From the sequence record MK250028.1: DNA of 64,000 nt; one strand, given 5' to 3'. The notes below the pieces were generated by a model. It saw only the letters and a program-made list of their open reading frames with translations. It made no database searches and was not told the DNA's origin. The position numbers were made by a program, and so were the translations under genes. This document shows positions 1 to 60,464 of the stretch, piece after piece (the stretch's first letter is position 1; each line of letters opens with the position of its first letter).

Positions 1-2978
1 CCTGTTACAACAGTCATCACACCTGCAATTGCCGTCATTACTACAGCACCTAATGTAATAAATGGAAGAATAGGCGTCATCGCACCTAATGCAGTCATAA
101 ATGTTCCCATAATAGTTAACAAACCTATCATTGTAGCTGCACCTAAAAATACTGCGCCACCTTTATTTAAATCATCAATTTTCTTTGCTTCCCATGCGAA
201 TAAAACCATTGTTCCTCCAACAATATCCATCACTGCACCAATAGCGGACATAACAATACCACCTATAATAGTATCTGGTAAAAATTTCTCTAATTTAGAA
301 ACACCGTACATTACCAAACCCATTAGACCTAAAACACATGCCATAACAGCAGCACCTAAAAATACTGCACCACCTTCATTTAATTCTAATATTTTCTTAG
401 ATTCTATTGCAAATGCTAAACATGCAGCCCCTGTTACTAACATAACTATTGCAACTGCAGTCATAATAACTGCACCAACTGCTAATTCAACTGCATACTT
501 ATCTGCGAATTTTCCTATAAAGAATAATACAGTTCCAAATATCGCTAATGTTCCTATCACAACACCTGCACCTATTAATGCGTCGTCCCACATTTTACCA
601 ATAGGAATCAATATATCTTTAACAATCAATGATATACCTAATAAAATAAATGCCATTGCCGCTGTTGCAAATATTGCATATGCTGCTTTCTTACCATCTA
701 CTTTAGCCAAGAAATAAGTACCTGCAATAAGAGTAATAATAATGAATAATGTAATACCCATTCCTATACCGGCTTCTTTACCATTCTAACCTATAGGAAT
801 AAGTAAATCTTTTGTAATCAATGCAATACCCATATAAATAATTGCGAGAGTAGCGGTTGCAAGAACACCCCATAAAGCATCTTTACCTTTTACCATATTC
901 AATACATAAACGCCTGCAACTAATCCTGTTATTATAAACATTGTTACTATTGCACCTAAATAAACTTCAGGTGCTTTCTTTCCAATAGGTATTAAAAACG
1001 CAACAGATATAATAGCAACCAATGCAAACACAGCAGATATTTTAATAAGATTATTTACCCCTCTATCTATACGTTTACCATGTTTATCTAATGATTTAAC
1101 TGCAAATATGCCTAATGCTATAATAAAAGATATAACCAACGCACCTTTTGATACATCATCTAATCTCTTGCCAATAGGTGCCAATAATGTTGCTGACACC
1201 AAAGCTATAATTGCAAATACAGCAGAAATCTTTAACATTGCATCTGTAGCGTATGTTAATTTCTTATTACCTATTTTAGACAATTTATTAACAATGAAAA
1301 TAGTTCCAGCAGTAAATAAAGTAAGTATTCCTATAGATGCAAGTATAGTTTCCGTACTATTATTTTTAGCAGTTAACGATAATAATAACATTGATACAGA
1401 TAATGACATAATCATTATTCCAATACCAGTTAAAACACCCTGTACATTTTTAAGACTCTTATCTAATTTCTTCTCTGATAAATCTTCTATCAAACTCTTA
1501 AATCCAGAAACAGCAACTCTCATAACAATTAAACTTGCAATCACTGCAGTTAATCCAACAATCTTAGTTACAATAGATAATCCTATAATAATACCGCCTA
1601 TCATACCTATTGCTGAACTTAAACTTCTTATTATAACCTATGCTCCTTTTACATCTTTAACTTTTAATTTTTTAGCTAAATCTGTAATAGTATTCTTCAT
1701 GAATTTAATCAAATACCTAACTACTAAAACAGATTCAATTATTGTTTTAAAAGATGTTATCTTTATAGTTAAAGCAATGAATACAATACCGTATAATAAT
1801 GTTTTCAATGCATTATTCCATGCATTCATAAAAGATGATAAAACTTTAACTTGTTTTACATCCCATTTTTCTTTTAATATTGTGTTAAAGAAATCTACTA
1901 TTTTCTATGCACGTTTCTGTGTTAATGATTTTACAGCAAACATGAAATTAAGAATCTATATCTTCTTAATATCAAATATTACATTTAATAACTATACCAT
2001 ACTATTAACAGTTTGCGCAACCGTTTTATTGTCTGGTATTTCCGTTGCAAATGCGACAAAGAAACTCGCAAGCATTTTAGCAGTAATAGGATTCAATACC
2101 TTCATTACTTTAAATATAGAAAACTTCTATTCAGGATCTGCTATCTTTACTAACGGATCTAATATACCACCAATATACTTAACATTCTCACTTATTTCTT
2201 TTCCTTTTAAATATTTAGCGATCTATCCTATGAACTAACCTAATTGTCTGCCTAATAACCAACCTCTTATAGGATTAAGACTTATCTACATTTTAAAAAC
2301 ATTTGATGTTACCAATGCGGATAATCCTCCCATCAAGTCTCCAATGGGTTTAATTATTTTTTGAATATCTTTATTTTTTAATTTCGTTTTACTAATAGAC
2401 GAAACTAATGCAGATATAAATTTGCCTAAACGTTGTGCAGTTTTAACGTCAAGCTTTCCAATATTTTCCTATAACTTAATCATATCAAGAGCAACAAGTT
2501 TGGACATTGTTTCAACAACTGCTTTAATTATACCGACACTTCGTCCTACTGATTTAGAATTCTATATTGTTAACCCTTGTATAAAATCAACTATTTTTTT
2601 TGCACCTTCTGCATTTATTTCTGTCATTTTATTAATAGCTTTCAGAAAACTATCAATATTTGTAAATGTATTGTCATCAACTTTAAGACTTGATAAAACT
2701 GTATTTACATTTCCTATAGATGTGGCAACTTTATTCAAAACATCATTGTCAATCTATTCCATGGATACAAGTCCTTTTGACAACTTCTCCAACTATTCTC
2801 CAACAGTTGCTGCTGATTCCTCTTTAGCTGTCTCAACGATACCCTATAACAAACTGACTATAGTAGAATCAGCTTTCTGTTCAATAGTTTCTTTCTTTTT
2901 CTCCTATTGCTGACTTACCATAGTGTCCAAAATATTAAATATACCGTTAAGTGCTTCTTCTGAAGACATTTGTGCCAT
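1..2978 (-). CDS. Tape-measure-like, hydrophobic Ala/Gly/Ile-rich repeat protein (3' end outside window; code 15)
   Basis: ATG at 2978 (MAQMSSEEALNG). Track ORFs 1638..1829 and 786..1604 are in the same frame and join through TAG codons (e.g. 1638-1640, 786-788). The frame stays open in the stretches I translated towards base 1. Repetitive amphipathic/hydrophobic helices. Confidence 0.65.
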
Positions 2979-9865: not shown

Positions 9866-10546
9866 TTACTTCTTATATAAAATATTATCAATCATTCCTT
9901 TAGAACCATATGATTTTGCTTCTTCTGCTGTCATCCAAAAATCTCTATCTGCATCAGATTTAATTTTTTTCATTGTTTGCCCAGAATGATTTGCAATAAT
10001 ATCATAAAGTTCTGTTTTTAACTTATTTATTTCTTTACATGTAATTTCTATATCACTTGCTTGGGTATGATCTCCAGTAGATGACATAGGTTGGTGAATC
10101 ATTACACGTGAATGTGGTAATGCGTATCTCTTTCCTTCAGTTCCTGCACAAAGTAATATACTAGCCATACTAGCTGCCATACCGGCACATATAGTAGATA
10201 CATCAGACCTTATAAATTGCATTGTATCATATATCTCTAATCCTGAATATACATCACCACCTGGTGAATTAATATAAATAGAAATATCAGTATTATCTAC
10301 ATTATCAAGATATAATAATTGAGATGTAATAATATTAGCACTTTCTGCTGTTACAGGATTACCTAAGAAAATAATTCTATCCATCATCAATCTTGAGAAT
10401 ACATCCATTTGTGATACGTTAAGTTGTCGTTCCTCAAGTATAGTAGGATTTTGATAACCCATATTTATACCATTCATATAATCATGTAAGTAAAGACTAC
10501 TTACATTTCTTGAATTCATAAACTTTTCAAAATCAGTTTTAATCAT
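9866..10546 (-). CDS. clpP: ClpP protease proteolytic subunit
   Basis: MDVFSRLMMDRIIFLG, YINSPGG, GMAASMAS (Ser), VMIHQP (His), DRDFWM (Asp). Confidence 0.95.
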   Translation of the reverse strand: MIKTDFEKFMNSRNVSSLYLHDYMNGINMGYQNPTILEERQLNVSQMDVFSRLMMDRIIFLGNPVTAESANIITSQLLYLDNVDNTDISIYINSPGGDVYSGLEIYDTMQFIRSDVSTICAGMAASMASILLCAGTEGKRYALPHSRVMIHQPMSSTGDHTQASDIEITCKEINKLKTELYDIIANHSGQTMKKIKSDADRDFWMTAEEAKSYGSKGMIDNILYKK

Positions 10547-13012: not shown

Positions 13013-13049
13013 AGTATATTTTATAAAGATATTTTATTTTCAAAATAAT

Positions 13050-13890
13050 AAAAAATAAACATCAAAATTGTGGTTCTAAATCTTACTGCTACTTACTAAG
13101 ACTACAATTTTGATGTTTATAAAAGCAATCATTCATTATCCTGCAGCATCCATATTAGTATAAGTTTCATTGCAATAGAACTTTACAACTATAGTGATAA
13201 TCCACTTATACATTCTTTTACTCTAAAGTCTTTTATATAACTTTATCATACATAATATATGTACTGTCCATCAATAAAAGGTTCTTTATTTCATCATGGT
13301 TTTATATCGTATAAACAACCCTCTGTATATCACTGATTCATTTCTTTACATTTAGAAATCAGAGTCTTTAAGCCTCAACGTTTGGCTGTAACTATTATCC
13401 TCAACCATTACCAGATAATGTCATCTTGTTTTTGTGGTGCATCTCACATACCTCCTTTAATCATAAAACAAGCAAAACTACTAAGACAAATAACGTTTCT
13501 TAGAACTTCTACGAATTTACGCTCATATCAAATCATCATCTGATATAGACACCTAAATTAAGTGAATAAAGTTTACGACTCAATATAAAATTTTATATCT
13601 CAACCTTTATCAAAAACGATTCATTAAATTCTTTTAAGGAACTTATTTCTAATTAAATGAAGGATTCATTTAAAATAGGTTCTCCCGAAAACATGCGGTT
13701 TATCCTTACTCATTATAATTATAATAAGCGTTGTTTATAGCACTCATTAGAATTCATTATGTATTATCTAACTCTCATTTATAATATTCATAATTTATAT
13801 GATATTAAAAGCAAAATGTCTAATATCATATTATAAATTATTTGTCTCGTTAGATATTATCAAAATTTCAAAGAACTCTTCATTGTTATT
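13050..13890 (-). ncRNA. Candidate large structured ncRNA A (~0.85 kb, family unassigned)
   Basis: No track ORF lies within it. Own class I promoter (13901-13912), many stem-loops, and a terminal 17-bp helix (13055-13071/13104-13120) followed by a U-run. Confidence 0.55.
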
Positions 13891-13900
13891 TTATTAACAA

Positions 13901-13912
13901 TACAAAGATACA
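13901..13912 (-). promoter_or_regulatory. Class I promoter TGTATCTTTGTA driving candidate ncRNA A
   Basis: Identical 12-mer. Confidence 0.75.
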
Positions 13913-13963: not shown

Positions 13964-14764
13964 TTATCTTACAAAACATGTTGCATATCCATGTTCAACC
14001 TTAATAAATAATACTTCACCATTTAACCACAATTTATCAAATGGTGTTTTATCACCATTTTCTTGCATATCTTTATGTTCATCAATAGCATATTTCTCAA
14101 TGTCATCAATACTACCTTTATAATAATTCTTTATGTTATCAGATTCAAGATATGCAATTCGCGACTTACATTCGTCAAGAAGTTCTTCAAATACAGGAAC
14201 AGATTTATTACAAAATCTGTCATACTCATTCTGAAAATTAATATTAGATGAACAAATACCATTTGTAATAATACGAGATACATTTTCAAGTTTCTCTAGA
14301 TTATCAAGGTCTACATAAAAATCATCGCATGTAATATCATTATCTTTATACATCACTATAGTATGAATTTTTGCATTCCATAATTCACACCATTTATTTG
14401 CTCCATCCTCTACAAGTTGTCCAAAATCATTATCATGAAAATCAAACATAATCATGAAATTCTTATCAACTGTAATATCATTGGTTTCATATGGATCACC
14501 TTTATACTTATGTCCATCATAAAGGCCTGTAAGATATGAAGAACGGCTTATCCTTAAAATCTCTTTCAAACAAAAATCCTTAATTTTTTTATATTCTTCG
14601 TCATTTAGATTATCTGTTCCATCAAGTAAATCTAATACTGAGTCATAATATTTTTCTTCATTTTTTACATAGTCATAAGACATATCTACAAATGGCTTGC
14701 CGAACATACGAATTTCAGATTTATTCATATCTTCTTGCATCTTCTTAAGATCTATTTCTTTCAT
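13964..14764 (-). CDS. Hypothetical protein
   Basis: 266-aa ORF. Confidence 0.75.
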   Translation of the reverse strand: MKEIDLKKMQEDMNKSEIRMFGKPFVDMSYDYVKNEEKYYDSVLDLLDGTDNLNDEEYKKIKDFCLKEILRISRSSYLTGLYDGHKYKGDPYETNDITVDKNFMIMFDFHDNDFGQLVEDGANKWCELWNAKIHTIVMYKDNDITCDDFYVDLDNLEKLENVSRIITNGICSSNINFQNEYDRFCNKSVPVFEELLDECKSRIAYLESDNIKNYYKGSIDDIEKYAIDEHKDMQENGDKTPFDKLWLNGEVLFIKVEHGYATCFVR

Positions 14765-14777
14765 ATTTCTTAATTAT

Positions 14778-15713
14778 TTACATTGTTCCATCATTAGGTT
14801 GCAAACACATAATTCCATGCTCTCGCCACATCTTAACCACTTTAGAAGAATCTTCCAATACAAACAATACATTATAATAAGGTTCAATATATTCCTTATA
14901 TAAATTATATTTACAATCTGGACCCTTTGTAAAATTCTTCAAAGGTCTCATTAACACCTTATCAACATTACCAATAAGGTTATTCTTCAACCAATCTTCT
15001 GTTGCATGTCTAATATCGTCTGTATCTTCTCTACCTGTCAATATAATAACATCCACTGATTTATCGGCAATATATGTATTAACAAGTTGGCAAAGTTGCT
15101 TACATGGTTTATCATCCCTCATGCTATCAGCAGCACCATTACCATAAAATGGCCGACCTTGAAGATTAAAACAAAGTGTAGCATCCATATCTACAAGAAT
15201 ACAATTCTTCTTCGTTTCATCAAACTTCTTAAAGCTATTATATTGCTTATTATTAAGTTGTGTAGCAATAAAGTTTCTATATCGCCTATAAGTAGATTTG
15301 ATAACGGATTCACCTATAGGATTAGATCTAAATGAATCTCTTCTAATACATTCCTCTACCGATACATCAAAGAAATCCTTAAATTCCAATGTATAATGAT
15401 ACTCATTATGTGTCTCATTATACTTATCAATTCTATCTTGCATTTCTTTCCATCCCTTTGGATTCAGGTTCATATTATCCATAATGATATTCCAACCTTT
15501 TTTCATAGGTGATTTAAAAAATGCATCTGTCATATCTTTAATAACAGAAAGTTTCTCACGTGATTCTACCCAATACTCACCGAACATGTTTCTAAGAGAA
15601 TCCCAATTAATTCTAATTCTCTCAGTTGGTTTTTCCTTTACCCAATGTTCAGCGAATGTAGACTTACCAGACGCTTGAATACCTCTTGTCAATATAATTA
15701 CCCTTTCTTTCAT
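14778..15713 (-). CDS. pseT: Polynucleotide 5'-kinase/3'-phosphatase (T4 PseT-like)
   Basis: N-terminal P-loop GIQASGKST and DSLR; C-terminal HAD motif LVDMDATL, LTGRE, FVLED. Confidence 0.9.
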   Translation of the reverse strand: MKERVIILTRGIQASGKSTFAEHWVKEKPTERIRINWDSLRNMFGEYWVESREKLSVIKDMTDAFFKSPMKKGWNIIMDNMNLNPKGWKEMQDRIDKYNETHNEYHYTLEFKDFFDVSVEECIRRDSFRSNPIGESVIKSTYRRYRNFIATQLNNKQYNSFKKFDETKKNCILVDMDATLCFNLQGRPFYGNGAADSMRDDKPCKQLCQLVNTYIADKSVDVIILTGREDTDDIRHATEDWLKNNLIGNVDKVLMRPLKNFTKGPDCKYNLYKEYIEPYYNVLFVLEDSSKVVKMWREHGIMCLQPNDGTM

Positions 15714-17377: not shown

Positions 17378-17575
17378 TCATTGCTCTTTTATTTTTCTTA
17401 AAATAAATTTAGGTTCTTGATAATAAAAATAATCTATTGTTTTATCATCTATAATGTTCAAATTATATAATGCTTGTGAAAACCTAATATCCTTATATGT
17501 CGTAAGATACTTCTTTAATATATCTAATATTTCCATATTAGCATTGTATCTCTCAAATGTTTCTTTAGCTTCCAT
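17378..17575 (-). CDS. Hypothetical protein
   Basis: 65-aa ORF coupled to the upstream gene. Confidence 0.6.
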   Translation of the reverse strand: MEAKETFERYNANMEILDILKKYLTTYKDIRFSQALYNLNIIDDKTIDYFYYQEPKFILRKIKEQ

Positions 17576-17973
17576 TAGAATAACGGATTAATTTTTATCT
17601 CGTTTGTTTTACTATATTCTTGTACATCTAAATTCAATGTTTCATTTAGCCAATCAGCAATTAAATGTCTGTGACAAAATTCATCTGGTTTTTCAAAACA
17701 ACATAAAGCACAATCTTTATTACCTGTTATAAACTTTAATCTATCTATAAATAAAGTTGGTTCTTTAAATATAGATAAAACTTCAGCTTTATATCGTTTT
17801 CTAAACTCTTGATGATTGCTTCTACAATTATTCAATATATCTGGTGTAGGTGCGATACTTGCTAAGTTAACCCCTTTGAAATCATTTGGCGGATAACAAC
17901 ACACACCTATAGGAATAATATTATTCTTTATAAGATTATTAATATTACCAAAATAGCTTGTATATATTTTCAT
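17575..17973 (-). CDS. DUF488-like protein
   Basis: KIYTSYFG, LAP-like IAPT and ALCCFEKPDEFCHRHLIADWL motifs. Confidence 0.7.
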   Translation of the reverse strand: MKIYTSYFGNINNLIKNNIIPIGVCCYPPNDFKGVNLASIAPTPDILNNCRSNHQEFRKRYKAEVLSIFKEPTLFIDRLKFITGNKDCALCCFEKPDEFCHRHLIADWLNETLNLDVQEYSKTNEIKINPLF

Positions 17974-18182: not shown

Positions 18183-18241
18183 AATACTAAAACTATATAA
18201 CTTAATGTTTATATAATATATAAATGTTTTTGTTTTATTTA

Positions 18242-18565
18242 ATGGGAGGTTTTGTTTATTTAATTTGCGATCCTGAATAGAATTGTTATAAAATAGGTGT
18301 AACAAGGAATATAGCATAGAATAGATTAAAGTAGTTATAGACTGGTAACTCATCAAAATTACATATGGTTTCAAATATATATTGTGAATATCCTTTTAGA
18401 CTTGAAACAATGTTACATAATAAATTCAATCATAAACGTGCAAATGGTGAATGGTTCTATTTAGAATAGGAAGATATAAGTAATTTTAAAACTATATGTG
18501 AAGAAACAATATAGATGATTAATGTAATGAAAGATAATCCATTCTTTAGTAAAGATTTAAAATGA
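18242..18565 (+). CDS. T5orf172/MUG113-like GIY-YIG-superfamily protein (107 aa, code 15)
   Basis: FVYLI...YKIGVT...RLKQLQTGN...LETMLH...NGEWF. Six TAG codons, including both Gln of KQLQTGN. Missed by the track. Confidence 0.8.
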
Positions 18566-18567
18566 AT

Positions 18568-18605
18568 AAAGGTGATATAAGAATAATAAAACTTATATCG
18601 CCTTT
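18568..18605. terminator. Bidirectional intrinsic terminator
   Basis: 14-bp stem between convergent genes. Confidence 0.75.
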
Positions 18606-18609
18606 ATTT

Positions 18610-18885
18610 TTAATTATCTTTCTTTTCTAATTCCTTATTAATATAATCCATATCTTCATCTGTTAAATCGCCAAATAATGTGAATAAATCTTTATTAATA
18701 AGTCCATATCTCATAAGATATGCTAATGTCATTCTTACAGCATAATCTGCAATATCATAAGTTGTTGTAACTTCTAAATTTTGTAAATCTGGATTATTAC
18801 CAACTACATTAGAAACTTTATCAACAATCTTATCACATGTTTTTTTCATTGAATTTAATTCATTATTTGTTAATTTGGTACTCAT
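18610..18885 (-). CDS. Hypothetical protein (91 aa)
   Basis: Likely start MSTKLTNNE at 18885; the track's upstream extension overlaps a terminator. Confidence 0.6.
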   Translation of the reverse strand: MSTKLTNNELNSMKKTCDKIVDKVSNVVGNNPDLQNLEVTTTYDIADYAVRMTLAYLMRYGLINKDLFTLFGDLTDEDMDYINKELEKKDN

Positions 18886-18942
18886 AATATCATTAAATAA
18901 TTTAATTATTATATTACAACGATATGCATAAAGTTTAGAAAT

Positions 18943-18983
18943 AAAAAATGAGTTATTAGACTTATGCACAATCTAATAACTCA
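18943..18983 (-). terminator. Intrinsic terminator closing candidate ncRNA B
   Basis: 12-bp perfect stem tgagttattaga/tctaataactca followed by T6 on the minus strand. Confidence 0.75.
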
Positions 18984-20050
18984 CAAACACTTTATTCTAA
19001 ATTTATTATATTTACATCTTATTTAAAGATGTCCCTCATGTTGTTATTTGTACGAACATAAGTTTCTGCCTCTTATGATTCACTTTAACGTTTGCCCGTT
19101 ATATAATGAATGTTCATACTGAACTTCGTTATGTCCATAAGGACAAATGGCTGAGAACTTGACCAACACCGACTCTCAATGCTGTAACGTTGGAGTTACA
19201 TGTTCACACAACTCTTATTTCTAAGAGGTTGAGAGCATACCCACGACTTTTGTAAAAAATCGTAAACTCTTACTTGATAGGTTTCATAGAAATTCATTTC
19301 ATACCAACTTCCTTGGAAGGATTCAATGTGTCCCCACATTTAGCACGATACTACTCTTACTATTCTCATGTCTTTCCTTGCGGTACTCGAATCATGTCTA
19401 CATATTACAGTAGAATAAGGGTATTTTAACCACCAAGTGTCGCACACTTTTGCTTATACATAATTATATGTTAAATAAAATAATTTCCAATATTATTATT
19501 CTTATTATATATTCTTTAGACTTGAAAGACGAGGTGCGACCAATAGCATTTCTTCCTTTTGAGAAGAACCCACTAAATCGCCTTTCTGAAATTTCGTTAC
19601 ACCAATGTAACCATATTTCTACTCTTATAACTTACCTATTGTTTTTCAATAGTAATCTTACCATTTCTGAAACAAGTTACCAGCTTGTATAAATTATTTG
19701 GTTTATAATTTATATAAGATTCATTATAACAATTAATATTAGCACTGGGAATTGGTATTCCGATCACTAAATATCCATAAACTTAAACTCCTATTGTATT
19801 ACTACTCACATCAGTTGTCTATCAAACTTCCAATGTATATAAACTTCATCTCAGGAATTATCCCATCAATTTCCCATTTATACAAGCACTTACTAAGTTT
19901 GGTTTTCTGTAGAATGCTCATTATTCATAAACATCGATAAACATGTCTACTGTTTACCTTTATCACATCACTGCTTTATCCTTACCCCACCGAAACCATG
20001 GGTTTATATTTCAAAGAACTCATCTTGAATAAAATAAATTCATTCAAATT
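18984..20050 (-). ncRNA. Candidate large structured ncRNA B (~1.1 kb, family unassigned)
   Basis: Own promoter (20059-20087) and terminator. No credible ORF. About 37% GC over 19021-19440 by hand count, visibly above the flanks. Dense hairpins and long-range helices. Confidence 0.7.
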
Positions 20051-20058
20051 TTATACTT

Positions 20059-20087
20059 ATTATATAATCAATAATTTAAAAAGTCTA
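20059..20087 (-). promoter_or_regulatory. Class II promoter TAGACT-N17-TATAAT driving candidate ncRNA B
   Basis: Exact consensus and spacing. Confidence 0.65.
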
Positions 20088-20407
20088 TATTTTAATAGAT
20101 ATATTTCAAAATTTTTATTGTTAACTGTTATTAAAAATATTAAATATTAAAATCTTTTTAAACTTGATTCTAAATTTATATATTAAATTAAATAGAAAGT
20201 CTATATTTCAATACAATATTTTTAAAAAATTATTTTAAACAATATTCTAAATCAAATATAAAGTCGCCTAATAGTTCAATCTTTTTCCTAATAAGTTCTG
20301 ATTCTAAATCAAATTTATGATCTATACAAAAATTTAATTCAATATATAACTTATCTCTATTAGATTTCCATTTATCTATTAATTCTTTCTTTGTTAATTT
20401 TTCCATC

Positions 20408-21672: not shown

Positions 21673-22106
21673 NNNNNNNNNNNNNNNNNNNNNNNNNNNN
21701 NNNNNNNNNNNNNNNNNNNNNNNNNNNNNNNNNNNNNNNNNNNNNNNNNNNNNNNNNNNNNNNNNNNNNNNNNNNNNNNNNNNNNNNNNNNNNNNNNNNN
21801 NNNNNNNNNNNNNNNNNNNNNNNNNNNNNNNNNNNNNNNNNNNNNNNNNNNNNNNNNNNNNNNNNNNNNNNNNNNNNNNNNNNNNNNNNNNNNNNNNNNN
21901 NNNNNNNNNNNNNNNNNNNNNNNNNNNNNNNNNNNNNNNNNNNNNNNNNNNNNNNNNNNNNNNNNNNNNNNNNNNNNNNNNNNNNNNNNNNNNNNNNNNN
22001 NNNNNNNNNNNNNNNNNNNNNNNNNNNNNNNNNNNNNNNNNNNNNNNNNNNNNNNNNNNNNNNNNNNNNNNNNNNNNNNNNNNNNNNNNNNNNNNNNNNN
22101 NNNNNN
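21673..22106. other. Assembly gap (N run)
   Basis: 434 N. Confidence 1.
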
Positions 22107-29623: not shown

Positions 29624-31369
29624 TTAGAAATTATCATATGTTTGTTCAAGCATCTTAACATAATCCATATGATAACCAAGAGGATGTTCTGATTCATTTA
29701 CAGGTTTCATAATAGGTTTTTGAGAAACTTTATAACGTTTAACAAATTCTTCATTCATTATACGTTGTGCTTCTCTATTTCTAAGACCAGTTTTCTCCCA
29801 GAACTCATCAACATCTTGTTTAGTTTCAAGAACCCAATAACGTGCCATATTCTCAATAGCATCTTGCTCTTGAAGAGAAGCATGTGTGTAAAGTTCAATA
29901 TCTTTAGGATCAGCCAATCTCAACCAATTCTTAAGGATACGTTTCTCTGCAAGAAGTGGAACATTCCATTGATTGTTAATATCATCAATCTTATAGATAT
30001 TATGTTCTACTACATATTTCATACATTTTTTCTTCTATGTAGGTTTAAGAGCCGCAAATTTCGCGAAGTTATCTGGTGATAATGAAACAGAGAATGGATA
30101 ACGTGAAATAATCTGTTCTTTAATTGCTTCCTTTTTTTCAAGATTATCAAGAAGATCTTGGAATTCCTCCATGTCTTTATCAGTTTCAGCTGCAATTCTT
30201 TCTGCTTTTTCTGTAGATGTTTTTGAATCTTCGTCAGCTGGTGTGGAATCTTCTGCATCATCATTAGTTGTATCTGTATCAGAAACGTCTTCATCTTTTG
30301 AGTTATCATCTGAATCTGCATCACCATCATCAGCTTTATCCTCATCAGACTATCCTTCTACATCAAGAATATCTGCACGTTTTTCGGCTTTCTCATCATC
30401 GTCTGTATTTTCATCGGAATCACTATCAGCATCTTCTGATGTAATATCGAGGATTAATGCGCGTTTCTTTTCTTTCTCATCATCTGTAGGTTCTGATTTT
30501 GAATCTTCACTCTTATTATCTTTTGTATCATTATTTTCATCTTTATTATCAGATGAATTATCTGAACCACTACCATCTGGTGTTACGTCTGCTTCTGGTA
30601 ATTTGAATTCTTCTTCATCTTCTTCAAGTAATGGTTTTGATAAATCTTTCAAATTAACCGGTTTGTTTTTCATTTCCATACATTTTTCATTTATTGGAGC
30701 ATCTTGCTCAAGTTCATTGACTGTAACACCTTCCATAAGAACCTTATATTTCTTATTAGTTGATTCTTTCTCTGATTTTTGAGCTGATACTGATTCATTG
30801 AGATATGACATAGTATTAACTCCCAAAGATTCATTAACTCTATCAAGTTTTGCTTCAGCGAAACCAGGTGTGCAAACAATATCATATGTAAAAATCTATG
30901 CTATTTCTACTTCATGTGTTTTCTCATCTACATCACCTGCAGCTCGAGAAGAAACAAACAATGGATAACCTGCTTCTACCAATTCCTATGCGATTTTACC
31001 ATTAGGTGTGTCGAGAATTTCAAGTTTACCCATTACATTATGATTTTCCTAATCATACCAGAGGTCTGTGATCTTATGTGACGCTTCTTTTAACTGAATA
31101 TCAAAACGACCTTCTGGATGATCCAACTCACCAAGAATTGAACCACTTTCTTTAATCATCTCACGTAAATACCCAAGGTGACGTAAAACTTCTTTTTCTG
31201 GATAACTTCTATTATTACGGTTAATTACAACATGACCTGGAACAGAACATGCAGTAAATACCCCGGAGAATATATATTTCTTATTATTTGGTGTACTGTC
31301 AAGAGACTCGTTAAGCGTAAGAGGCTACAATGACTTACTTTTTATCATTAACTTATTACTTTTTGTCAT
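29624..31369 (-). CDS. Prohead core protease (T4 gp21-like) fused to an acidic linker and a C-terminal domain (581 aa, code 15)
   Basis: NRNNRSYP, GELDHP, ASHKI, ILDTPNGKI, VSSRAAG, YDIVCTPGF. In frame through TAG with track ORFs 30350..30826 and 29624..30022. Confidence 0.85.
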
Positions 31370-31416
31370 AAAACAAAATAAATCTTATTTTTATTATTTA
31401 TTCAATATATTTTATA

Positions 31417-32436
31417 TTATTTCTTAAATAATGAGTCTCTATAATATTCATCAAATTTTTTTTCTTTTAACGCATAATTTATTGATTTAGATAATTTATT
31501 AAAATATATATTAAAAAAATGATTAATATTATATTTTACTTTATTTGCATTTATTTTATCAATAGATGTATATTTTTTATTCTTTAACATTTTTTTAATC
31601 GAAGAACCTTTTATATCATTTTTTAATACATTCTACATATGACAATAATATCCAATAAGATTTAACAATAATACATAATCGTAGTCATTTTTAATAATAT
31701 TTTTTTCAGTTAACATAGTATAGTCTAGTAAATATTTATCATATAAATTTATATCTTTAAAATATTTTATTAATGACCCTGTAGTATCATTATCCTAAAT
31801 TATATTATCTATTTCTTCATTTGATAAATCTAATATTAATCTATATTGCTAATTAATTCTTGCTTGTATTTCTGTTGGTGATAGCAAATATAATATATCT
31901 TTTACTGTATTAAGAAATTCTGGTAAAATATTAAATGTGTTTTTAATATTATCACTCATATTTTTATTATTAAGTATAATATTTTTATCTTTAAATTTAT
32001 ACATATGATTTACATGTATAAATTCATGATGGAAAATAGATTTTATTGTTTTAATATTAAAGCCTTTTACAACATTTGCATTTATTTTAACGATATGATC
32101 ATTTATATCTATATCAATTCCACGAATATCTGCTGTTGCATTTGCATTATTATTCCAATTTGTTTCCCATAATACATATATAGAATATAATTCATTATTT
32201 TCTTTTTCATTACATTTAATACATTCCGACGTTTCTATATTTAATTTCCAACCAGTATATATTAATCCATATAATCGTCCTCTTGACTATATAAATTTAT
32301 CATATATATCATCAACTACATCATCAAATGTTCGTAATATATGAAATTCTTCTAACAATGTATTAGATATTGTTTCTATTATACTTTCATATAATCTCTA
32401 TTTTAAATTTCTTGGTATTGTATTGTATACACTCAT
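31417..32436 (-). CDS. Zincin-like metallopeptidase (339 aa, code 15)
   Basis: SIFHHEFIHVNH (HExxH) and downstream LSPTEIQAR; 5 TAG codons; missed by the track. Confidence 0.65.
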
Positions 32437-32460
32437 ATTTACTAATTAAATATTTTACAT

Positions 32461-32468
32461 TATTTATA
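32461..32468 (-). promoter_or_regulatory. Possible T4-like late promoter TATAAATA
   Basis: Exact consensus 25 nt upstream of 32436. Confidence 0.35.
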
Positions 32469-32548
32469 ATAATTAATAGTTATATCTATAGTAACAATTA
32501 AATTAGATTAAATATATAAATGAAATTTATTACTAATAAATTTCATAA

Positions 32549-33940
32549 TTAACATATATTTAATATAAATGCACTCATATTATTTTTATTTATAATATCT
32601 AAAGTATTATTTTTAATTATTTTATTATTTTTATTTTTTCGTTGTCCAGATAAGTAATTAAAATTTTTAATACCATTTTTATCAACCTATGAAGGAAATA
32701 CATAAATTTGATTTATAATAATATTATTTTTATTAAATGAATAAACTAATATAATACCAATATCTACATTATTTCTTATATTACTATTCATAATTGTATT
32801 TTTATCTAAATTTTTCTAATTTATACATTTAATCTAAATATGCTATGTAATATTATTGTTTTCGTCTGTTAGCGAAAAGTCTTTAGTAGGCTAACCATTT
32901 TTATCGTTTGTTACTTTCATATGTGAAACTGTATACTCATCTTTAATTATTTCTATCACTGCATTTTCTATTGTTAAACCAGTAATCCATCCTACATTTT
33001 TTGTTAAATTTACTGTTATATTATGATTTGTAATATTATTATAACCAGTAATATAAACTTTTGATAAAAATATATTATCTTTAATTTTATTAAATTGATT
33101 ATGTAATATATTTAATAAATTTAACTAAAAAATTGTTATATTTTTAGATTTATATAAAATTGATGAAGCCTCATCAACATATTCATTATCAGTAATACTT
33201 TCATATATCATCTTAATATCATTACTAGATATTCTATGATATGATTCTTTTACAGATATAGGTTCAACTCTACTCGTAAAATCTTCGATACATTTCTTTG
33301 TATCAAATTCTATATTTCGTCCTAAACCTCTTAATTTATCTTTATCTTTTTCTTTATCTAATATTCCTTCTTTTACCAATTCATTGAATGCATACTTATC
33401 ATCAGATACATATGTTGTTCCATTCTTTTTCCATTCATCTGTATATGTTTCAGTTTTACTATCATAACTAGCATCACAATTACCAAATAATCTTTTTGTA
33501 TCTTTCCTGTATGCATTTCCTTTCTCTGGTATATAGCATCTGAATTGCTTTCCATCATAATAAATCATTACACATAATGGGCATTCCCAATCACCTCCAA
33601 CCATCATTACAATATACGGACATCCTTTAACTGCTCGTAATCCACCGGTAATATCATAATTTTCTCAATCAGGTTGAATTCCTTTAAAATCTTTCTTAAT
33701 GATAGTTTCACCTTTCTTATCATTATAATATATTGTTCTTATAGCTCTTGGTAATGATGATATAATTTTGGAAGTAGAATTAGTTTTATTCATTTTATCG
33801 GTAGTCCAACTATCATCTTTACATGTATCAAGAATAAATTTCTTTGCTTTCTCTCCAAACTATTTCTCTGATAATTTAGCAATCTTTCTACCACCTTTTC
33901 TTAATTTTACATCATTATATAATGAATAATATTTTCCCAT
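32549..33940 (-). pseudogene. Hypothetical protein with one in-frame TGA (GGDWExP-motif protein)
   Basis: One continuous frame from ATG 33940 in code 15, except TGA at 33665-33667 (QPD*ENY). Includes track ORF 33125..33607. Confidence 0.45.
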
Positions 33941-33942
33941 TG

Positions 33943-35418
33943 TTAACTATATTTTATTTTATATTTTTTAATTTCAGATGGAACAGTATATAAGAATTTT
34001 ATAAATTCATCTAACGTCCATTCTGCATATGAATCAAATTCGTCTTCATTAATATCCAAACTTAATAATTCTCTATTAACATAATAATCAATATTTGATT
34101 TATCTATTATTAAATTATCATTTAACCATAAATCATTAATAACTTTATTCTTTATTAATAATTTTATATTTGGATAATTTTTACCTTTATTATCTGTATC
34201 ATTCATTGTAACACTATCGCATACTTCATATAATAATTCAAATTCTCTGAATGTTAATACATCAATAGACATACAATCATCATTATCATATGTGTCACTA
34301 TCTTGACCATCCAAATATATAACATCTTCTAATGGGAAATAATAATCATTATCATTTAAATTATATATTTCATCATCAACAATAACATTATAAATTTTTG
34401 CATAATTTCCATTTGGATCACCATAACCATAATCAAATTCACCAACATCAAATGTTAATGTTCCTCTATCATATCCTAATTTTAGAAAATCCCATGAATT
34501 TAATAATCTTCCAGAATTTCCCTTATTACTCATAGGTGTACCTTTATCAAAAAATGCAATATTATTCATGTTATATTTTCTTAAATCTATACATGAAAAA
34601 TCCTAATCAAATGAACCACATAGAAATAACATATTCTTAAATGATTTTACACTATTCATATTCCATTTCTATATAGGTTGATTAAACTTCTTACATAAAC
34701 TAAACATGTTATCCATACATTCTACTTTTGATACATCCCAATTACTAATATCCTAATTAAATAGTTCACAGTTATTAAACATATCGGTCATGTCAAGAGC
34801 ATTCTCAGTATTCCATTTAGTTATATCACCATTAAATTTCCTACATGTATCAAACATACCTATAAAAAATTCAACATTATGAACGTCCCAATTACTTATA
34901 CCATTATTACCATCATATTCTTTACAGTAAATAAACATGTTTGTCATTGTACATACATTAGATGTATTCCATTTACTAAGATCACATATCTATATCTAAT
35001 TGCCAAATACTTGTTTCATTCTTGTTACATGTGCAGTATTCCAATCCTCTACATGCCAAAATATAGGATACTTATCTCCCATCTATGGTTTGAACTAAAG
35101 TAAATAATCCAATTTCTTTACATTACGTATATCAATCCAATTAAGATTAAATTCATGTATATCATCTTTAAATAACTAAGGTTTAATCTTATTATAAATT
35201 AAATCATGTAATTCATTATAATCCGCAACTTTATATTGAAACTATGGTGTTAATACTAATTCTAGATCATCATCAGATACAGTAAAACCATTCTTTAACT
35301 TATTTAATATATTATCGACATCTCGACCTATTAATATATCACTATGATCAATTTCATTATCAAATATATCGTCATCATCAAATAATGATTCCATTAAATT
35401 ATATATATATTTCTTCAT
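33943..35418 (-). CDS. DUF285/BspA-type repeat protein (491 aa, code 15)
   Basis: LNWIDIRNV followed by repeats such as DLSKWNTSNV, FNGDITKWNT, FNQDISNWDVSKV (Q=TAG), FNQPIQKWN. Confidence 0.8.
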
Positions 35419-49084: not shown

Positions 49085-50434
49085 ATGCAAGTATTGAAGA
49101 TTAAATATCAAACAGATGATTAGTCATTAGATATTATACAGAATTATATGAGACAATATAGTTCTGTATAGCATTTTGTATATAATAGAAATCAAGAAGG
49201 TAAATCATAGAAAGATATAAAATAGCAACTTAAATCTTTAAATAATGTAGATTTATTAGATAGTTGGTTTATTCAATGTTCTTTCTATGATATTCCAAAT
49301 AAAAATAATGTAATATTTGGTGGAAAGAAAAATTACTTTTAGAGATTAAAGAATAATATTACTAAAGAACAATTTAAATAGAAACGATTATCAGCTATAT
49401 ATTCAATAGGTGAAGTAGTTAATAAATCAGTTAAAGGAAACAGAAAATTTCATATAGAACAAGATTTAGAAAATATTACTTTCAAACCTAATAAATCTAC
49501 TAAAATAAATTTACAACTTATAGGACTAAATAAACGTAAATAGATTCTATCAAAACTTTATTAGAAACAAGAACAAAAAGAAATAAAGATAGCTTATAAG
49601 TTAGACTTAGAATATGTTTATATAATATTTGATGAAACTAATATTTATAATTATAAAACTAAATTTATAAAGAATAGAGTTCTCTCATTGGATTTGAATC
49701 CTAATTATATAGGATGGAGTATTGTTAATTGGAAATCAGAATCAGAATTTGATGTAGTTAAATCTGGTATTTATTCTATTAAAAAGTTAAATGATAAAGA
49801 TTTTAATTTAAAGAATAAAGGGTATAGTTCTGAATCTAATGAAAGAAAATATATAAGTAATAAACGTAATTTTGAGACTATATAGATAGTAAAGAATTTA
49901 ATTAATAAAGCAATATATTATAAATGTCAATTAATTTCTATTGAAGATTTAAATATTAAATCAAGTGATAAAGTGTTTGGTAAGAGATTTAACAAGTTAG
50001 TTAATAATTCATGGTGTAGGAATACATTTGTAAATAATTTAATTAAACGATGTAATATATTCAATATAAAGTTATTAAAAGTTAAACCGGAATATAGCTC
50101 ATTTATTGGTAACTTTTTATACCGTTCATTAAATTTACCTGATATGGTATTAGCGTCAATAGAAATTGGACGTAGAGGATATGAGTTTTATAATCAATAT
50201 ATAAGTAAAACTAAAGAGATAAAAAAGAATATAATTCAACCTGATTTAAATATGTATCAAAGGTTGTACCTTAAGTCATTGGAAGAATTTAAGTTACAAC
50301 CTACATACAAGGATTTGATTGGACTATATTACTTCTTCAAAAAGTCGAAACTTAAATATCGACTTTCTACAGATTAGTTTAATCTGTAGTTTTACAGATT
50401 TTATTCAAATGTAAGTTTAATTACATTTATATAA
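49085..50434 (+). CDS. tnpB: TnpB-like RuvC nuclease without zinc finger (449 aa, 11 TAG)
   Basis: RuvC-I LSLDLNPNYIGWSIV, RuvC-II ISIEDL, VKPEYSSFIGN, RuvC-III LPDMVLASIEIGRR. Confidence 0.8.
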
Positions 50435-58407: not shown

Positions 58408-58431
58408 TTTAAATTTATATACATTCTCTTT
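58393..58431. terminator. Bidirectional intrinsic terminator
   Basis: 14-bp stem between convergent endonuclease genes. Confidence 0.7.
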
Positions 58432-58448
58432 TATTATTTTCTAAATAT

Positions 58449-59635
58449 TCATTTATTATAGTTTTTATTATTTCTATCTTATTGCTCCATATAGGAAGAT
58501 AATTCAGATTATTCATTTTCGCAGTTTGACATTTAAAAGGATCAATGATTGACCAAACATTTACAGCAGATTTATATTGTTTTGATATTTCTGCTTTTTG
58601 TTTCCACTTATTTAATAAATCAATATCATCTTTATTATCTTCATCAAATAAATGTTTCCCATGTGTCCAAAATGCGTTTATCTCTATAAATAAATCTAAT
58701 GGTTTTATATAGAAATCTACATGGAATGGATAACGCTCATCAACATTTACATTAAACTATATATCATCTTTATCAAATATTGTTTGTAAATATTCATATG
58801 TTTGATATTCTGGTTTTGACATACCAAAATTATCTTTATATTTTTTCTTTATTGTTTTTACATATTGATCAAACTAATATTGATGAAAATTTTCTAATGA
58901 ACCATATTTTTTAATAACAGTTTCTTTTGTCTTTTCTTTATTATTAAATGTTGGATCCCCATATAATTCTAATTTTGTTTCTTTAATTTTGTTTTTTATT
59001 TCTTCATTTTTTGCAGGGTTATCAACGCCATATTTTTTAATAACAGTTTCTCTTGATTTTTCTTTATTATTATCTGACTAAAAACTATATTTACACCCAT
59101 ATTTTTTTAAACATGTATTAATTGATTTCTATTTAACTTCTTCATTCTATCCTGAAAATTCTACANNNNNNNNNNNNNNNNNNNNNNNNNNTGTCTTCTA
59201 TAAATATTCCGATGTTTTTGTATATGATGAAACTCCATATTTTTCTAAACATGTTTGTTTTATTTTATCTTTAACTGATTTTAACTACATTTGATGTTCA
59301 ACACCATATCGTTCTTTTAATGTATTTTTTATTTTATTCTATACATTAACTGAATTCATTACACATCGTGAATTTGAACAAAATTTACGAAATCCTCTAC
59401 TATAACAATTAAATCTCACAGGTTTCCCACATGTTTCACATACTGGTCTTATTTCTATTTTATTTACAATACGGTATATTGTCTCCTATATAGATTCGCT
59501 ATCATTATATCTATTAATTAAATAATCATAAATATCTTGATGTTTATTTAACCAAGATAATCTTGTATAATTTTTTGCTAACTAATTCTTTTTTGTTATA
59601 AATTTTTCTTTTATGTAGTCATCATTAATAATCAT
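58449..59635 (-). CDS. Homing endonuclease with KYG repeats and a Vsr-like domain (interrupted by N gap; code 15)
   Basis: RPVCETCG..GFRKFCS, TxxxKYGV repeats, RYPFHVDFYIKPLDLFIEINAFWTHG. Missed by the track. Confidence 0.7.
59166..59191. other. Assembly gap (N run)
   Basis: 26 N. Confidence 1.
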
Positions 59636-59674
59636 ATCTAATAATAAATTATTATTATTTTTAATTATATAAAA

Positions 59675-59720
59675 AATGAGGTAAATAGTTTTTAACAGAA
59701 TTAAAACTATTTACCTCATT
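59675..59720 (-). terminator. Intrinsic terminator below the recA C piece
   Basis: 18-bp perfect stem. Confidence 0.75.
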
Positions 59721-59726
59721 AATATA

Positions 59727-60464
59727 TTAATTAATACTTGCTTCTTTTATAGGATCTTCATCATTATCATTTTCATCTGAAATACCCATTGTTTCCTCCA
59801 AATCTTTAACATCATCAAATGCAGATTGATCTGGTAATTGGAACATTGGGTGAATAACATGCTCATTTATATAATCAAGATATTCTGGTGTAAATACCTT
59901 ATCAGACCAAAATTCAGTAAAAGGAACTTGTTCATTAAGATGTTTTACTACAATATACCTTGCTGTATCTTTCGGTAAACAATAATGTGTTTCACCATCA
60001 TCTGTTGTCCATGTATATACTTTCTTTTTATCTGAATCTGATAATTTATCATATTCTTTTTGCGTAAGTAAATTTCCTCTACAAACACCTGAATTGTCCC
60101 ATGTCATAAATTGTTCCAAACCAACATATGGGTTAGGTTTTTTAAAATATGGAATTTGAAATTTCACTTTAATTGGTCTGCAAAAACGAGACTTAACTGG
60201 TTTTGCTGTAACTAAAACACCATTCTTTGTACCTGCATCAGAACCTTGTCTTGATTTTGCAGCTGAATCATTCTCTTTATCTTCCAGTTTAGCAGCACTT
60301 AATTCAATTGTAATTGATGCATTATATACAATACCTGAATTATGATTTATAATACCATTTGCAGAAACATAATTATGTGTGTCTTTAACTGTTAAATCTA
60401 TTACATCCTCACTTAATTCTGACTATATCTTCTTTACAATCTTTAACTTTCTATATTTCATCAT
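59727..60464 (-). CDS. recA: Split-intein C part (42 aa) plus RecA/UvsX C-terminal piece (TAG at codon 14)
   Basis: VIDLTVKDTHNYVSANGIINHN|SGIVYNASITIEL; KSRFCRP. Confidence 0.85.

What the first reader, a model, noticed from the sequence alone, without database searches (positions are those of the whole stretch)
18943..20087. ~1.1-kb promoter-to-terminator unit with no ORF: candidate new large structured phage RNA (B)
Seen: a TAGACT-N17-TATAAT promoter (20059-20087) and a perfect terminator with U-tract (18943-18983) bracket about 1.07 kb. The longest minus-strand ORF I found is 47 aa. GC is about 37% over 19021-19440 (hand count), higher than the flanks. Local hairpins are dense (ttccttggaa, aatgtgtccccacatt, caactcttatttctaagaggttg, tgtaacgttggagttaca, gttacaccaatgtaac). 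Long-range complements include a perfect 12-bp pair 19683-19694/19876-19887, tgggaattg/caatttccca (about 19746/19867) and gtcgcac/gtgcgac (about 19438/19535). The last competes with a local hairpin, suggesting a pseudoknot or switch. Known: phages of gut and rumen bacteria carry giant ornate RNAs (GOLLD, ROOL) of unknown function. Inference: this is a large ncRNA of that kind; I cannot assign it to a family.
Basis: partly seen in the sequence, partly recalled or inferred. Interest (0 to 1): 0.88.

Follow-up and report, generated by a model that had tools for sequence, protein, structure and literature searches.

The report
New 1-kb structured RNA of Lak megaphages
The gene-free stretch is a real, separately transcribed, about 1,000-base folded RNA gene found only in Lak megaphages of gut Prevotella; it belongs to no described RNA family, is better conserved than the protein genes beside it, and its function is unknown.

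Summary
The window is a Prevotella Lak-B megaphage. Window 18943-20087 (minus strand) is a non-coding RNA gene: conserved promoter, boxA-like leader motif, about 985-nt conserved core (20023-19040), variable trailer and covarying intrinsic terminator.

No frame is open under any stop-codon recoding, and only 1 of 31 indels is a multiple of three. Nineteen homologues (84-99.9% identical) support about 290 base pairs. There are 37 compensatory pairs against 0-4 in shifted controls, plus two covariation-supported pseudoknot helices.

Against the A/C clade the 3' domain is 97% identical and the 5' domain 89%. The AT-rich linker is 70%, and flanking genes are 70-80%.

In four RNA-seq studies one 926-1020-nt contig covers just this core and neither flanking gene.

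Rfam 15 gives nothing. GOLLD, ROOL, OLE, introns, RNase P and tmRNA are not matched. No homologue was found in 185,579 species genomes, 151 host-family genomes or another 673-kb phage.

Its interpretation holds too. Devoto et al. had already noted large, highly expressed Lak intergenic regions, but no structure or family.

Most likely it is a trans-acting stable RNA with GOLLD-like layout; what it does remains inferred.

The parts
20175..20203 (-). Upstream second copy of the promoter-like module (TAGACT-N17-TATAAA)
   Evidence: Sequence read. AATATAGACTTT occurs twice on this strand, at 20196-20207 and 20080-20091. One RNA-run contig (X17) reaches 20096 plus 8 more letters, so some transcripts may start upstream of the main promoter.
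20059..20087 (-). Promoter-like module TAGACT-N17-TATAAT; predicted start near 20052
   Evidence: It is conserved in 17 of 19 homologues. ATAGACTTT-N12-18-TATAA occurs 8 times against 0 for the control in the 554-kb Lak genome G002, including inside a tRNA island. The start site itself is inferred, not mapped.
20008..20021 (-). Leader motif GAGTTCTTTGAAAT (boxA-like)
   Evidence: Exact copies lie at the 5' end of this unit and of unit A at 13865-13878. With 0-1 mismatch it also occurs in tRNA clusters of Lak genomes. GTTCTTTGAAA occurs only 4 times in G002. The rrn leaders of two host-family genomes carry AGCGAT(C/A)TTTGAAA about 200 nt before the 16S gene. The antitermination role is inferred.
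19524..20023 (-). 5' domain, about 500 nt, multi-branched, rich in covariation
   Evidence: Alignment A2 columns 90-592. It is 88.9% identical between the window and the A/C clade. Helices with 2-3 compensatory pairs each lie at columns 157-163/173-179, 180-188/194-202, 231-239/271-279, 401-410/418-427 and 548-554/560-566.
19534..19540 (-). Pseudoknot PK1, 5' strand GUCGCAC
   Evidence: It pairs with 19439-19445. All 19 sequences are canonical, and L012 has GUCACGC/GCGUGAC, which is 2 compensatory pairs. It lies inside the loop of helix columns 530-538/584-592, which has its own compensatory change in L012.
19453..19516 (-). Variable AT-rich linker (11.8% GC over 19453-19520), prone to indels
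   Evidence: Columns 600-690. It is 70% identical to the A/C clade and carries indels of 4-26 nt.
19439..19445 (-). Pseudoknot PK1, 3' strand GUGCGAC
19048..19445 (-). 3' domain, about 400 nt, nearly invariant (37.7% GC)
   Evidence: It is 97.3% identical between the window and the A/C clade, where flanking genes are 70-80%. The 195-nt sub-domain A4 has 97% mean column identity. It holds a GCAA and a GAAA tetraloop and a candidate second pseudoknot helix, columns 705-713/865-873, in which L012 changes GC to AU and GU to AU.
19049..19058 (-). 10-nt palindrome UUYGUACRAA at the 3' end of the conserved core
   Evidence: It is a perfect palindrome in L004 and L013 (UUCGUACGAA) and in the A clade (UUUGUACAAA). 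The window has one C.A mismatch. The ends of the RNA-run contigs fall just inside it. A role as processing or dimerisation site is speculative.
18984..19047 (-). Non-conserved 3' trailer, probably trimmed from the stable RNA
   Evidence: It is 49% identical to the A/C clade. None of the four RNA-run contigs covers it.
18943..18983 (-). Intrinsic terminator: 13-15 bp hairpin plus T-run
   Evidence: Four compensatory and two one-sided changes keep the stem, and the T-run is conserved.

Best explanation
Window 18943-20087 (minus strand) is a stand-alone gene for a roughly 1.0-kb highly structured non-coding RNA. It is specific to Lak megaphages, is single-copy, and is the largest non-coding unit of the genome.

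Shown. Transcription signals are conserved: a promoter module that recurs elsewhere in the phage, including a tRNA island, and a covarying intrinsic terminator. The RNA that accumulates in gut and wastewater metatranscriptomes is a discrete piece of about 0.93-1.02 kb that matches the conserved core (about 20050-19045) and not the flanking genes. The core folds into a covarying 5' domain and a nearly invariant 3' domain. A variable AT-rich linker joins the two, and a pseudoknot helix closes it.

Inferred. The leader motif GAGUUCUUUGAAAU is shared with the phage's tRNA operons and a second large RNA (unit A), and it resembles the host-family rrn leader element. It probably acts like boxA, giving Nus-factor antitermination so that a long untranslated transcript escapes Rho. 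The 3' trailer is probably trimmed.

The RNA acts in trans as a stable RNA. My best guess for how, at about 0.3, is the GOLLD/ROOL way: it would be an RNA-only or RNA-dominated higher-order assembly or scaffold, tied to the phage's tRNA and translation take-over. The extreme conservation of the 3' domain would then reflect dense tertiary or intermolecular contacts. The confidence given below is for the identity as a novel structured stable ncRNA gene, not for that function.
For: Identity of the genome: 100% match to Lak-B5/B9.

Non-coding; only 1 of 31 distinct indels is a multiple of 3; the short 5' ORF is lost or frameshifted in other clades.

Structure: RNAalifold gives 294 pairs with 99.5% canonical cells and 37 compensatory pairs, against 0-4 in slid controls. 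As a non-circular test, the MFE of the window sequence alone was scored on the 17 other sequences. That gave 91.8% canonical cells (slid 39-44%), 40 compensatory pairs (slid 4-9) and an MFE z-score of -4.3.

Strand: the sense fold is -191 kcal/mol against -117 for the antisense, and 12% of paired cells are G.U.

Conservation: 3' domain 97.3%, 5' domain 88.9%, linker 70% and trailer 49%, against flanking genes at 70-80% nucleotide identity and the adjacent 91-aa protein at 45-48% amino-acid identity.

Expression: one contig of 926-1020 nt in each of 4 RNA runs from 4 studies lies on 19064-20096 only. Devoto et al. report intergenic regions among the most highly expressed parts of Lak genomes.

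Promoter and leader recurrence; host rrn leaders.

GOLLD-like layout (conserved 3', less conserved 5', variable linker, phage-borne, tRNA connection): one search compared.
Against: No experiment or strand-specific read set was available. Logan contigs cannot show true 5' and 3' ends, strand or abundance.

Covariation rests on about 6 independent lineages, all at least 84% identical. Most of the 3' domain never varies, so its fold there is predicted rather than tested.

The function is unsupported by any direct evidence, and no oligomerisation signal could be tested.

No tRNA lies in the 64-kb window, unlike typical GOLLD/ROOL loci.

The boxA reading rests on a roughly 9-nt similarity in two host-family genomes. 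The related 12-mer is enriched in the family (18 against 4), but in G010 it is not at rrn.

One RNA contig runs through the proposed promoter.
Confidence: 0.85

Rival explanations
1. It is a structured decoy or sponge RNA. On this reading the phage makes an abundant RNA that titrates a host factor, such as a defence nuclease, an RNA-binding protein or a ribosome-associated factor, rather than forming an assembly of its own.
For: It is abundant and discrete in metatranscriptomes. The near-invariant 3' domain fits a conserved host partner. It sits in a block with a polynucleotide kinase-phosphatase and a DUF488 protein, which points to an RNA-repair or counter-defence context.
Against: It has no sequence similarity to host-family 23S rRNA beyond shuffles. 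There are no tRNA-like or tmRNA-like elements. Model R1 found no credible host homologue in 151 host-family genomes. One kilobase is large for a simple decoy.
Confidence: 0.15
2. It is a very divergent member of the GOLLD family (or ROOL), beyond the reach of the Rfam models.
For: The overall layout matches what is described for GOLLD: a conserved 3' region, a less conserved 5' region and a variable linker. It is phage-encoded and shares expression signals with tRNA genes.
Against: cmscan of 18600-20400 against all 4227 Rfam 15 families at E up to 10 gave only five chance hits. None was to GOLLD, ROOL or OLE, and the whole window at gathering score gave none. No tRNA is adjacent.
Confidence: 0.06
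3. It is a long cis-acting leader or regulatory element for the downstream 91-aa gene (18610-18885), or an antisense regulator, and not a trans-acting RNA.
For: The 91-aa gene follows the unit in every lineage examined. The trailer between core and terminator could allow regulated read-through.
Against: A strong, covarying terminator separates them. RNA-run contigs stop at about 19064-19102 and do not include the downstream gene. The RNA is about 90% conserved where the protein is only 45-48% identical. Nothing is encoded on the opposite strand.
Confidence: 0.04
4. It is protein-coding after all (alternative code, small ORFs, frameshifting), or it is a decaying pseudogene or intron remnant.
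For: The phage recodes TAG in a subset of genes. A plus-strand ORF of 80-104 aa and a 47-aa minus-strand ORF exist.
Against: All six frames hold at least 10 TAA stops. Thirty of 31 indels are not multiples of 3, including a 1-nt difference between strains 99.6% identical. Substitutions are compensatory in helices. The unit is conserved above the level of neighbouring genes, which is the opposite of decay. There is no group I or II intron match and no split flanking gene.
Confidence: 0.02

Closest known systems
GOLLD RNA (Rfam RF01998)
   Same: It is a large (over 800 nt) ornate RNA carried by phages and prophages and linked to tRNA genes. It has a universally conserved 3' region, a less conserved 5' region and a variable linker. 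It is abundant during infection and its function is unknown. The Lak RNA has the same three-part conservation pattern and shares its promoter and leader with the phage's tRNA operons.
   Different: There is no covariance-model match even at E up to 10. No tRNA is adjacent or nested. The host clade and phage type differ. Multimer formation is untested.
ROOL RNA (Rfam RF03087)
   Same: It is a phage or prophage RNA from gut and rumen habitats, about 600 nt long, with multiple pseudoknots and no known protein partner. It can be as abundant as rRNA.
   Different: There is no model match. The Lak RNA is about 1.6 times longer and has a two-domain layout with an AT-rich linker.
Large, highly expressed intergenic regions of Lak phages (Devoto et al. 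2019)
   Same: This is the same object class, and this locus is very probably among them. The paper describes gene-free regions of up to about 1.5 kb, some among the most highly expressed parts of the genome. In the complete genome G002 this locus is the largest such gap, at 1561 nt.
   Different: The paper gives no boundaries, structure, covariation, family assignment or comparison. Those are supplied here.
rrn boxA antitermination leaders (E. coli rrn and lambda nut boxA; from established knowledge)
   Same: A short U-rich motif sits early in long untranslated transcripts. The phage motif GUUCUUUGAAA resembles the AGCGAU(C/A)UUUGAAA element found in the rrn leaders of two host-family genomes.
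   Different: This concerns only the leader motif, not the RNA body. Binding of NusB/NusE has not been tested.

Membership tests
GOLLD (RF01998) | Match to the family covariance model | tested here: not met
   There were no hits at gathering score in the window. No GOLLD hit appeared at E up to 10 with lax filters on 18600-20400.
GOLLD (RF01998) | Conserved 3' region, less conserved 5' region, variable linker | tested here: met
   Identity to the A/C clade is 97.3% for the 3' domain, 88.9% for the 5' domain and 70% for the linker, which also carries indels. This is a resemblance of layout, not homology.
GOLLD / ROOL | Encoded in phages or prophages, usually beside tRNA islands | tested here: inconclusive
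   It is phage-encoded. No tRNA lies in the 64-kb window. The promoter and leader module is, however, shared with tRNA clusters elsewhere in Lak genomes.
GOLLD / ROOL | RNA-only homo-oligomeric nanocage | not testable with these tools
   This needs cryo-EM, SEC-MALS or mass photometry of the transcript. The only lead is a 10-nt palindrome at 19049-19058.
ROOL (RF03087) | Match to the family covariance model | tested here: not met
OLE (RF00110 class) | Match to the family model; Firmicutes extremophile context with oapA/B/C genes | tested here: not met
   There is no model hit. The neighbours are phage genes of unknown function, DUF488 and PNKP.
Group I / group II introns | Match to intron models; insertion within a host gene with flanking exons | tested here: not met
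   There is no model hit. The unit has its own promoter and terminator. The flanking 58-aa and 91-aa ORFs are complete and separate in all lineages.
RNase P RNA / tmRNA | Match to family models; tRNA-like domain and tag ORF for tmRNA | tested here: not met
   Rfam gave nothing, and ARAGORN found no tRNA or tmRNA in the window.
Ribosomal RNA fragment or mimic | Sequence similarity to host rRNA | tested here: not met
   The best local alignment to a host-family rrn locus scored 20.6 bits, within the range of 30 shuffles (20.6-26.9). There were no SSU or LSU hits.

The most novel reading that the evidence does not exclude
The Lak RNA would be a third, unrelated class of phage RNA that builds a large RNA-only (or RNA-dominated) particle or machine. 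The near-invariant 400-nt 3' domain would be its assembly or catalytic core. It would be expressed under rRNA-like antitermination together with the megaphage's tRNA set, as part of its take-over of host translation. Unit A, 6 kb away, would be a second such RNA.
Probability: 0.2. Interest if true: 0.9.

Novelty: new variant of a known kind. Interest (0 to 1): 0.72.

Why it matters
Very few natural RNAs of this size are known outside rRNA and introns. The three best-known large ornate RNAs (GOLLD, ROOL, OLE) were recently shown to form RNA-only quaternary structures, and the function of all three remains poorly understood.

A fourth, unrelated RNA of about 1 kb has several attractions. It comes from phages that are among the largest known in the human and animal gut. 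It is abundant in metatranscriptomes from several studies. Its 400-nt domain is more conserved than any neighbouring protein gene. That makes it a ready target for cryo-EM and chemical probing.

It also gives a concrete handle on the unexplained 'highly expressed intergenic regions' of Lak phages. The boundaries, fold and alignment produced here are enough to define an Rfam-type family and to synthesise the transcript.

The shared leader motif also suggests how a phage protects long untranslated transcripts in a Bacteroidota host.

Tried and rejected
1. Alternative genetic codes: TAG recoding raises coding coverage of the window from 71% to 85%, but every frame of the unit has at least 10 TAA stops.

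2. Known RNA families: none matched at gathering score or at E up to 10.

3. rRNA mimicry: this was prompted by GAGUACCGCAAGGAAAG resembling a 23S segment recalled from memory. The alignment to a host-family rrn locus is no better than shuffles.

4. Homologues outside Lak:
- An invariant 22-mer is absent from 185,579 species genomes.
- The metagenome pattern scan returned only Lak contigs.
- nhmmer on 80 DUF488-anchored viral loci gave only the four Lak loci.
- BLAST and model R1 found nothing in the 673-kb phage G003.
- R1 found nothing credible in 151 host-family genomes, best E 0.2.

5. Paralogy of units A and B: they share only the 14-nt leader motif and an 11-mer.

7. Adjacent 91-aa protein as an RNA partner: the AlphaFold model has pLDDT 65 and is all-helical, so it is uninformative and was not searched further. 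The Atlas gave no hit.

8. The 12-mer GATCTTTGAAAG as a host rrn marker: it is enriched 18 against 4, but in G010 it is not at rrn, and the two MAGs with hits at contig ends have no 16S assembled. Only the looser motif is supported, by direct reading of two rrn leaders.

9. The count of structure pairs was not used. Typing a 1255-character structure risked the text check, so the same counts and slid controls were computed in Python.

Full report
WHAT THE WINDOW IS. The stretch 18943-20087 is 100% identical to Prevotella phage Lak-B5 and Lak-B9, and 89-90% identical to Lak-A1, A2 and C1. The window has 25% GC. A subset of its genes is open only if TAG is read as a sense codon, as published for Lak phages.

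CHECK OF THE OBSERVATION. The longest minus-strand ORF is 47 aa. GC of 19021-19440 is 36.7%, against 21-23% in the flanks. All five hairpin strings are present.

HOMOLOGUES. I used the downstream 91-aa protein as a synteny anchor. This gave contigs from ENA and Logan assemblies in which a gene-free gap of about 1.3 kb always precedes the anchor. Together with IMG/VR and GenBank copies, they yield 19 distinct sequences in about six lineages, 84-99.9% identical to the window.

The conserved core runs from window 20023 to 19040. The promoter region, an AT-rich linker (19516-19453), the 3' trailer (19047-18984) and the terminator are much more variable. Identities between the window and the A/C clade are as follows:

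| Region | Identity to A/C clade |
|---|---|
| 5' domain | 88.9% |
| Linker | 70% |
| 3' domain | 97.3% |
| Trailer | 49% |
| Downstream 91-aa gene | 70% (nucleotide) |
| DUF488 gene | 80% (nucleotide) |

The 91-aa protein is only 45-48% identical at the amino-acid level. The non-coding core is therefore under stronger constraint than the genes around it.

NOT CODING. Only 1 of 31 distinct indels inside the core is a multiple of three. One 1-nt indel separates strains that are 99.6% identical, and it falls inside the plus-strand ORF. The 13-codon ORF at the 5' end is frameshifted in the A clade and loses its ATG in L012.

STRUCTURE. RNAalifold on the 19 sequences gives 294 pairs. Of the paired cells, 99.5% are canonical. 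Thirty-seven pairs change on both sides, against 0-4 when the 3' partners are slid by 1-3 columns. Of 39 pairs in which both columns vary, 31 stay canonical in every sequence.

RNAalifold uses covariation, so I also folded the window sequence alone. The MFE is -268 kcal/mol, z = -4.3 against shuffles. I scored those 363 pairs on the other 17 sequences. That gave 91.8% canonical cells (slid 39-44%) and 40 compensatory pairs (slid 4-9).

The minus strand is the RNA strand. The consensus fold is -191 kcal/mol, against -117 for the antisense, and 12% of paired cells are G.U.

An exhaustive search for conserved stacks found two long-range helices that RNAalifold missed:
- PK1 is GUCGCAC/GUGCGAC (19540-19534 with 19445-19439). 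L012 carries two compensatory changes. It crosses helix columns 530-538/584-592, so it is a pseudoknot that closes the variable linker.
- The second candidate is ACUUGGUGG/CUAUCAAGU (columns 705-713/865-873). L012 changes GC to AU and GU to AU.

They compete with local helices that do covary.

The 3' domain varies too little for its fold to be tested. It holds a GCAA and a GAAA tetraloop, and a GUAA and a further GAAA loop lie in the 5' domain.

EXPRESSION. Devoto et al. reported gene-free regions of up to about 1.5 kb in Lak genomes, some among the most highly expressed parts of the genome. They assigned no structure. In the complete A-type genome G002 this locus is the largest gap free of ATG-started ORFs of 60 aa or more, at 1561 nt.

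Nine runs on record as RNA, from four studies, hold part of the sequence. I laid four of these runs, one from each study (two gut, pig gut, wastewater). Each has a single Logan contig of 926-1020 nt. The contigs lie on 19064-20034, 19102-20096, 19102-20037 and 19102-19984. Nothing lies on the flanking genes.

These contigs are of A-clade type and stop 100-140 nt short of the terminator, at the end of the conserved core. That suggests 3' trimming. One contig runs past the proposed start into the promoter, which may reflect the second promoter copy at 20203-20175. Contigs cannot prove ends, strand or level.

SIGNALS SHARED WITH tRNA OPERONS. The 14-mer GAGTTCTTTGAAAT at 20021-20008 also begins a second gene-free unit (A) at 13878-13865. 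With 0-1 mismatch it also sits in tRNA clusters of Lak genomes. In one of them it follows the same ATAGACTTT-N17-TATAAT module. That module occurs 8 times in G002, against 0 for the control.

The rrn leaders of two host-family genomes carry AGCGAT(C/A)TTTGAAA about 200 nt before the 16S gene. This resembles the classical boxA antitermination element, which I cite from my own knowledge. I therefore infer that the motif recruits Nus factors so that long untranslated transcripts escape Rho. This has not been tested. A stricter 12-mer gave mixed results.

WHAT IT IS NOT. Rfam 15 gives no hit in the window at gathering score. At E up to 10 on the locus it gives only five chance hits. GOLLD, ROOL, OLE, group I and II introns, RNase P and tmRNA are therefore not matched. 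ARAGORN finds nothing. Similarity to host-family 23S rRNA is at shuffle level.

I found no homologue in any of the following:
- 185,579 species genomes, searched with an invariant 22-mer;
- JGI metagenomes, apart from Lak contigs;
- 76 other phages carrying DUF488, or the 673-kb phage G003;
- 151 genomes of the host family, searched with a covariance model of the 3' domain.

The RNA is single-copy in Lak genomes.

HOW IT PROBABLY WORKS. It is shown to be an independently transcribed, discrete, structured, non-coding RNA. How it acts is inferred. Its three-part conservation pattern, phage origin, abundance and link to tRNA expression parallel what is described for GOLLD and ROOL, which form RNA-only nanocages of unknown function.

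I rate a GOLLD/ROOL-like assembly or scaffold role at about 0.3 and a decoy or sponge role at about 0.15. A cis-regulatory role and a coding role each rate below 0.05. A 10-nt palindrome at the very end of the core (19058-19049) is perfect in three lineages. It is a lead for dimerisation or processing, and nothing more.

NOVELTY. The locus belongs to a class already flagged as expressed (Devoto et al.). No paper in the searched library links Lak phages to structured RNAs, and the family is absent from Rfam. It is a new RNA family of the 'large ornate phage RNA' kind.

Noticed in passing
window 13045-13912 (minus strand): Unit A is a second gene-free unit of about 850 nt. It has a Bacteroidota-type promoter (TGTATCTTTGTATTG, i.e. 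TAnnTTTG, 13898-13912). It carries the same leader motif (13865-13878) and a strong terminator (arms 13104-13120 / 13055-13071 plus T-run). It is 78-80% conserved in A-clade Lak genomes, in the same position about 6 kb downstream of unit B. Visible compensatory changes are present. Its body is not similar to unit B. Eight RNA runs hold a small share of its words.
   Followed up: partly
window 18224-18565 (plus strand): This is a GIY-YIG / T5orf172 / MUG113 homing-endonuclease-like gene that is open only with TAG=Q (6 TAG codons). It lies on the opposite strand between the 91-aa gene and DUF488. It is full-length in some lineages (L013-L015, L019, L024, L025), truncated in L011 and L012, and absent in L020, L023, L026 and L027. 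It therefore looks mobile.
   Followed up: partly
window 14778-15713 and 17575-17973 (minus strand): A T4-like polynucleotide kinase-phosphatase (AAA_33 plus HAD_PNKP) and a DUF488-N3a protein lie between the two large RNAs. This block is syntenic in all Lak lineages seen. The 266-aa gene next to PNKP (13964-14764) has no Pfam match and was not tested for an RNA-ligase fold.
   Followed up: partly
window 3-2978, 29624-35418, 49085-50434, 58415-61800: TAG is used as a sense codon (5-15 per gene) in a subset of long genes only. The genes around the RNA units have none or one. This is consistent with the published split of Lak genomes into regions that use TAG and regions that do not.
   Followed up: no
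window 9866-10546 (minus strand): The phage ClpP protease has its nearest genomic relatives (60-72% identity) in Bacteroidales, including Prevotellaceae and Alloprevotella. This fits the Prevotella host assignment.
   Followed up: partly
L030 (G002:36800-39800) about 1936-2270: A tRNA-like gene in the Lak tRNA island is interrupted by about 250 nt after the anticodon region. This is probably one of the 'enigmatic' tRNA introns reported by Devoto et al. ARAGORN did not call it.
   Followed up: no
window 21673-22106 and 59166-59191: These are runs of N (434 and 26 bases).
   Followed up: no
G002 gaps 84649-85350, 125415-126154, 284813-285478, 458301-458929: Several further ORF-free stretches of 600-750 nt in the complete Lak genome have only 13-18% GC and no tRNA. 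They look unlike the two structured units and were not examined. They could be origins, promoter arrays or spacers.
   Followed up: no
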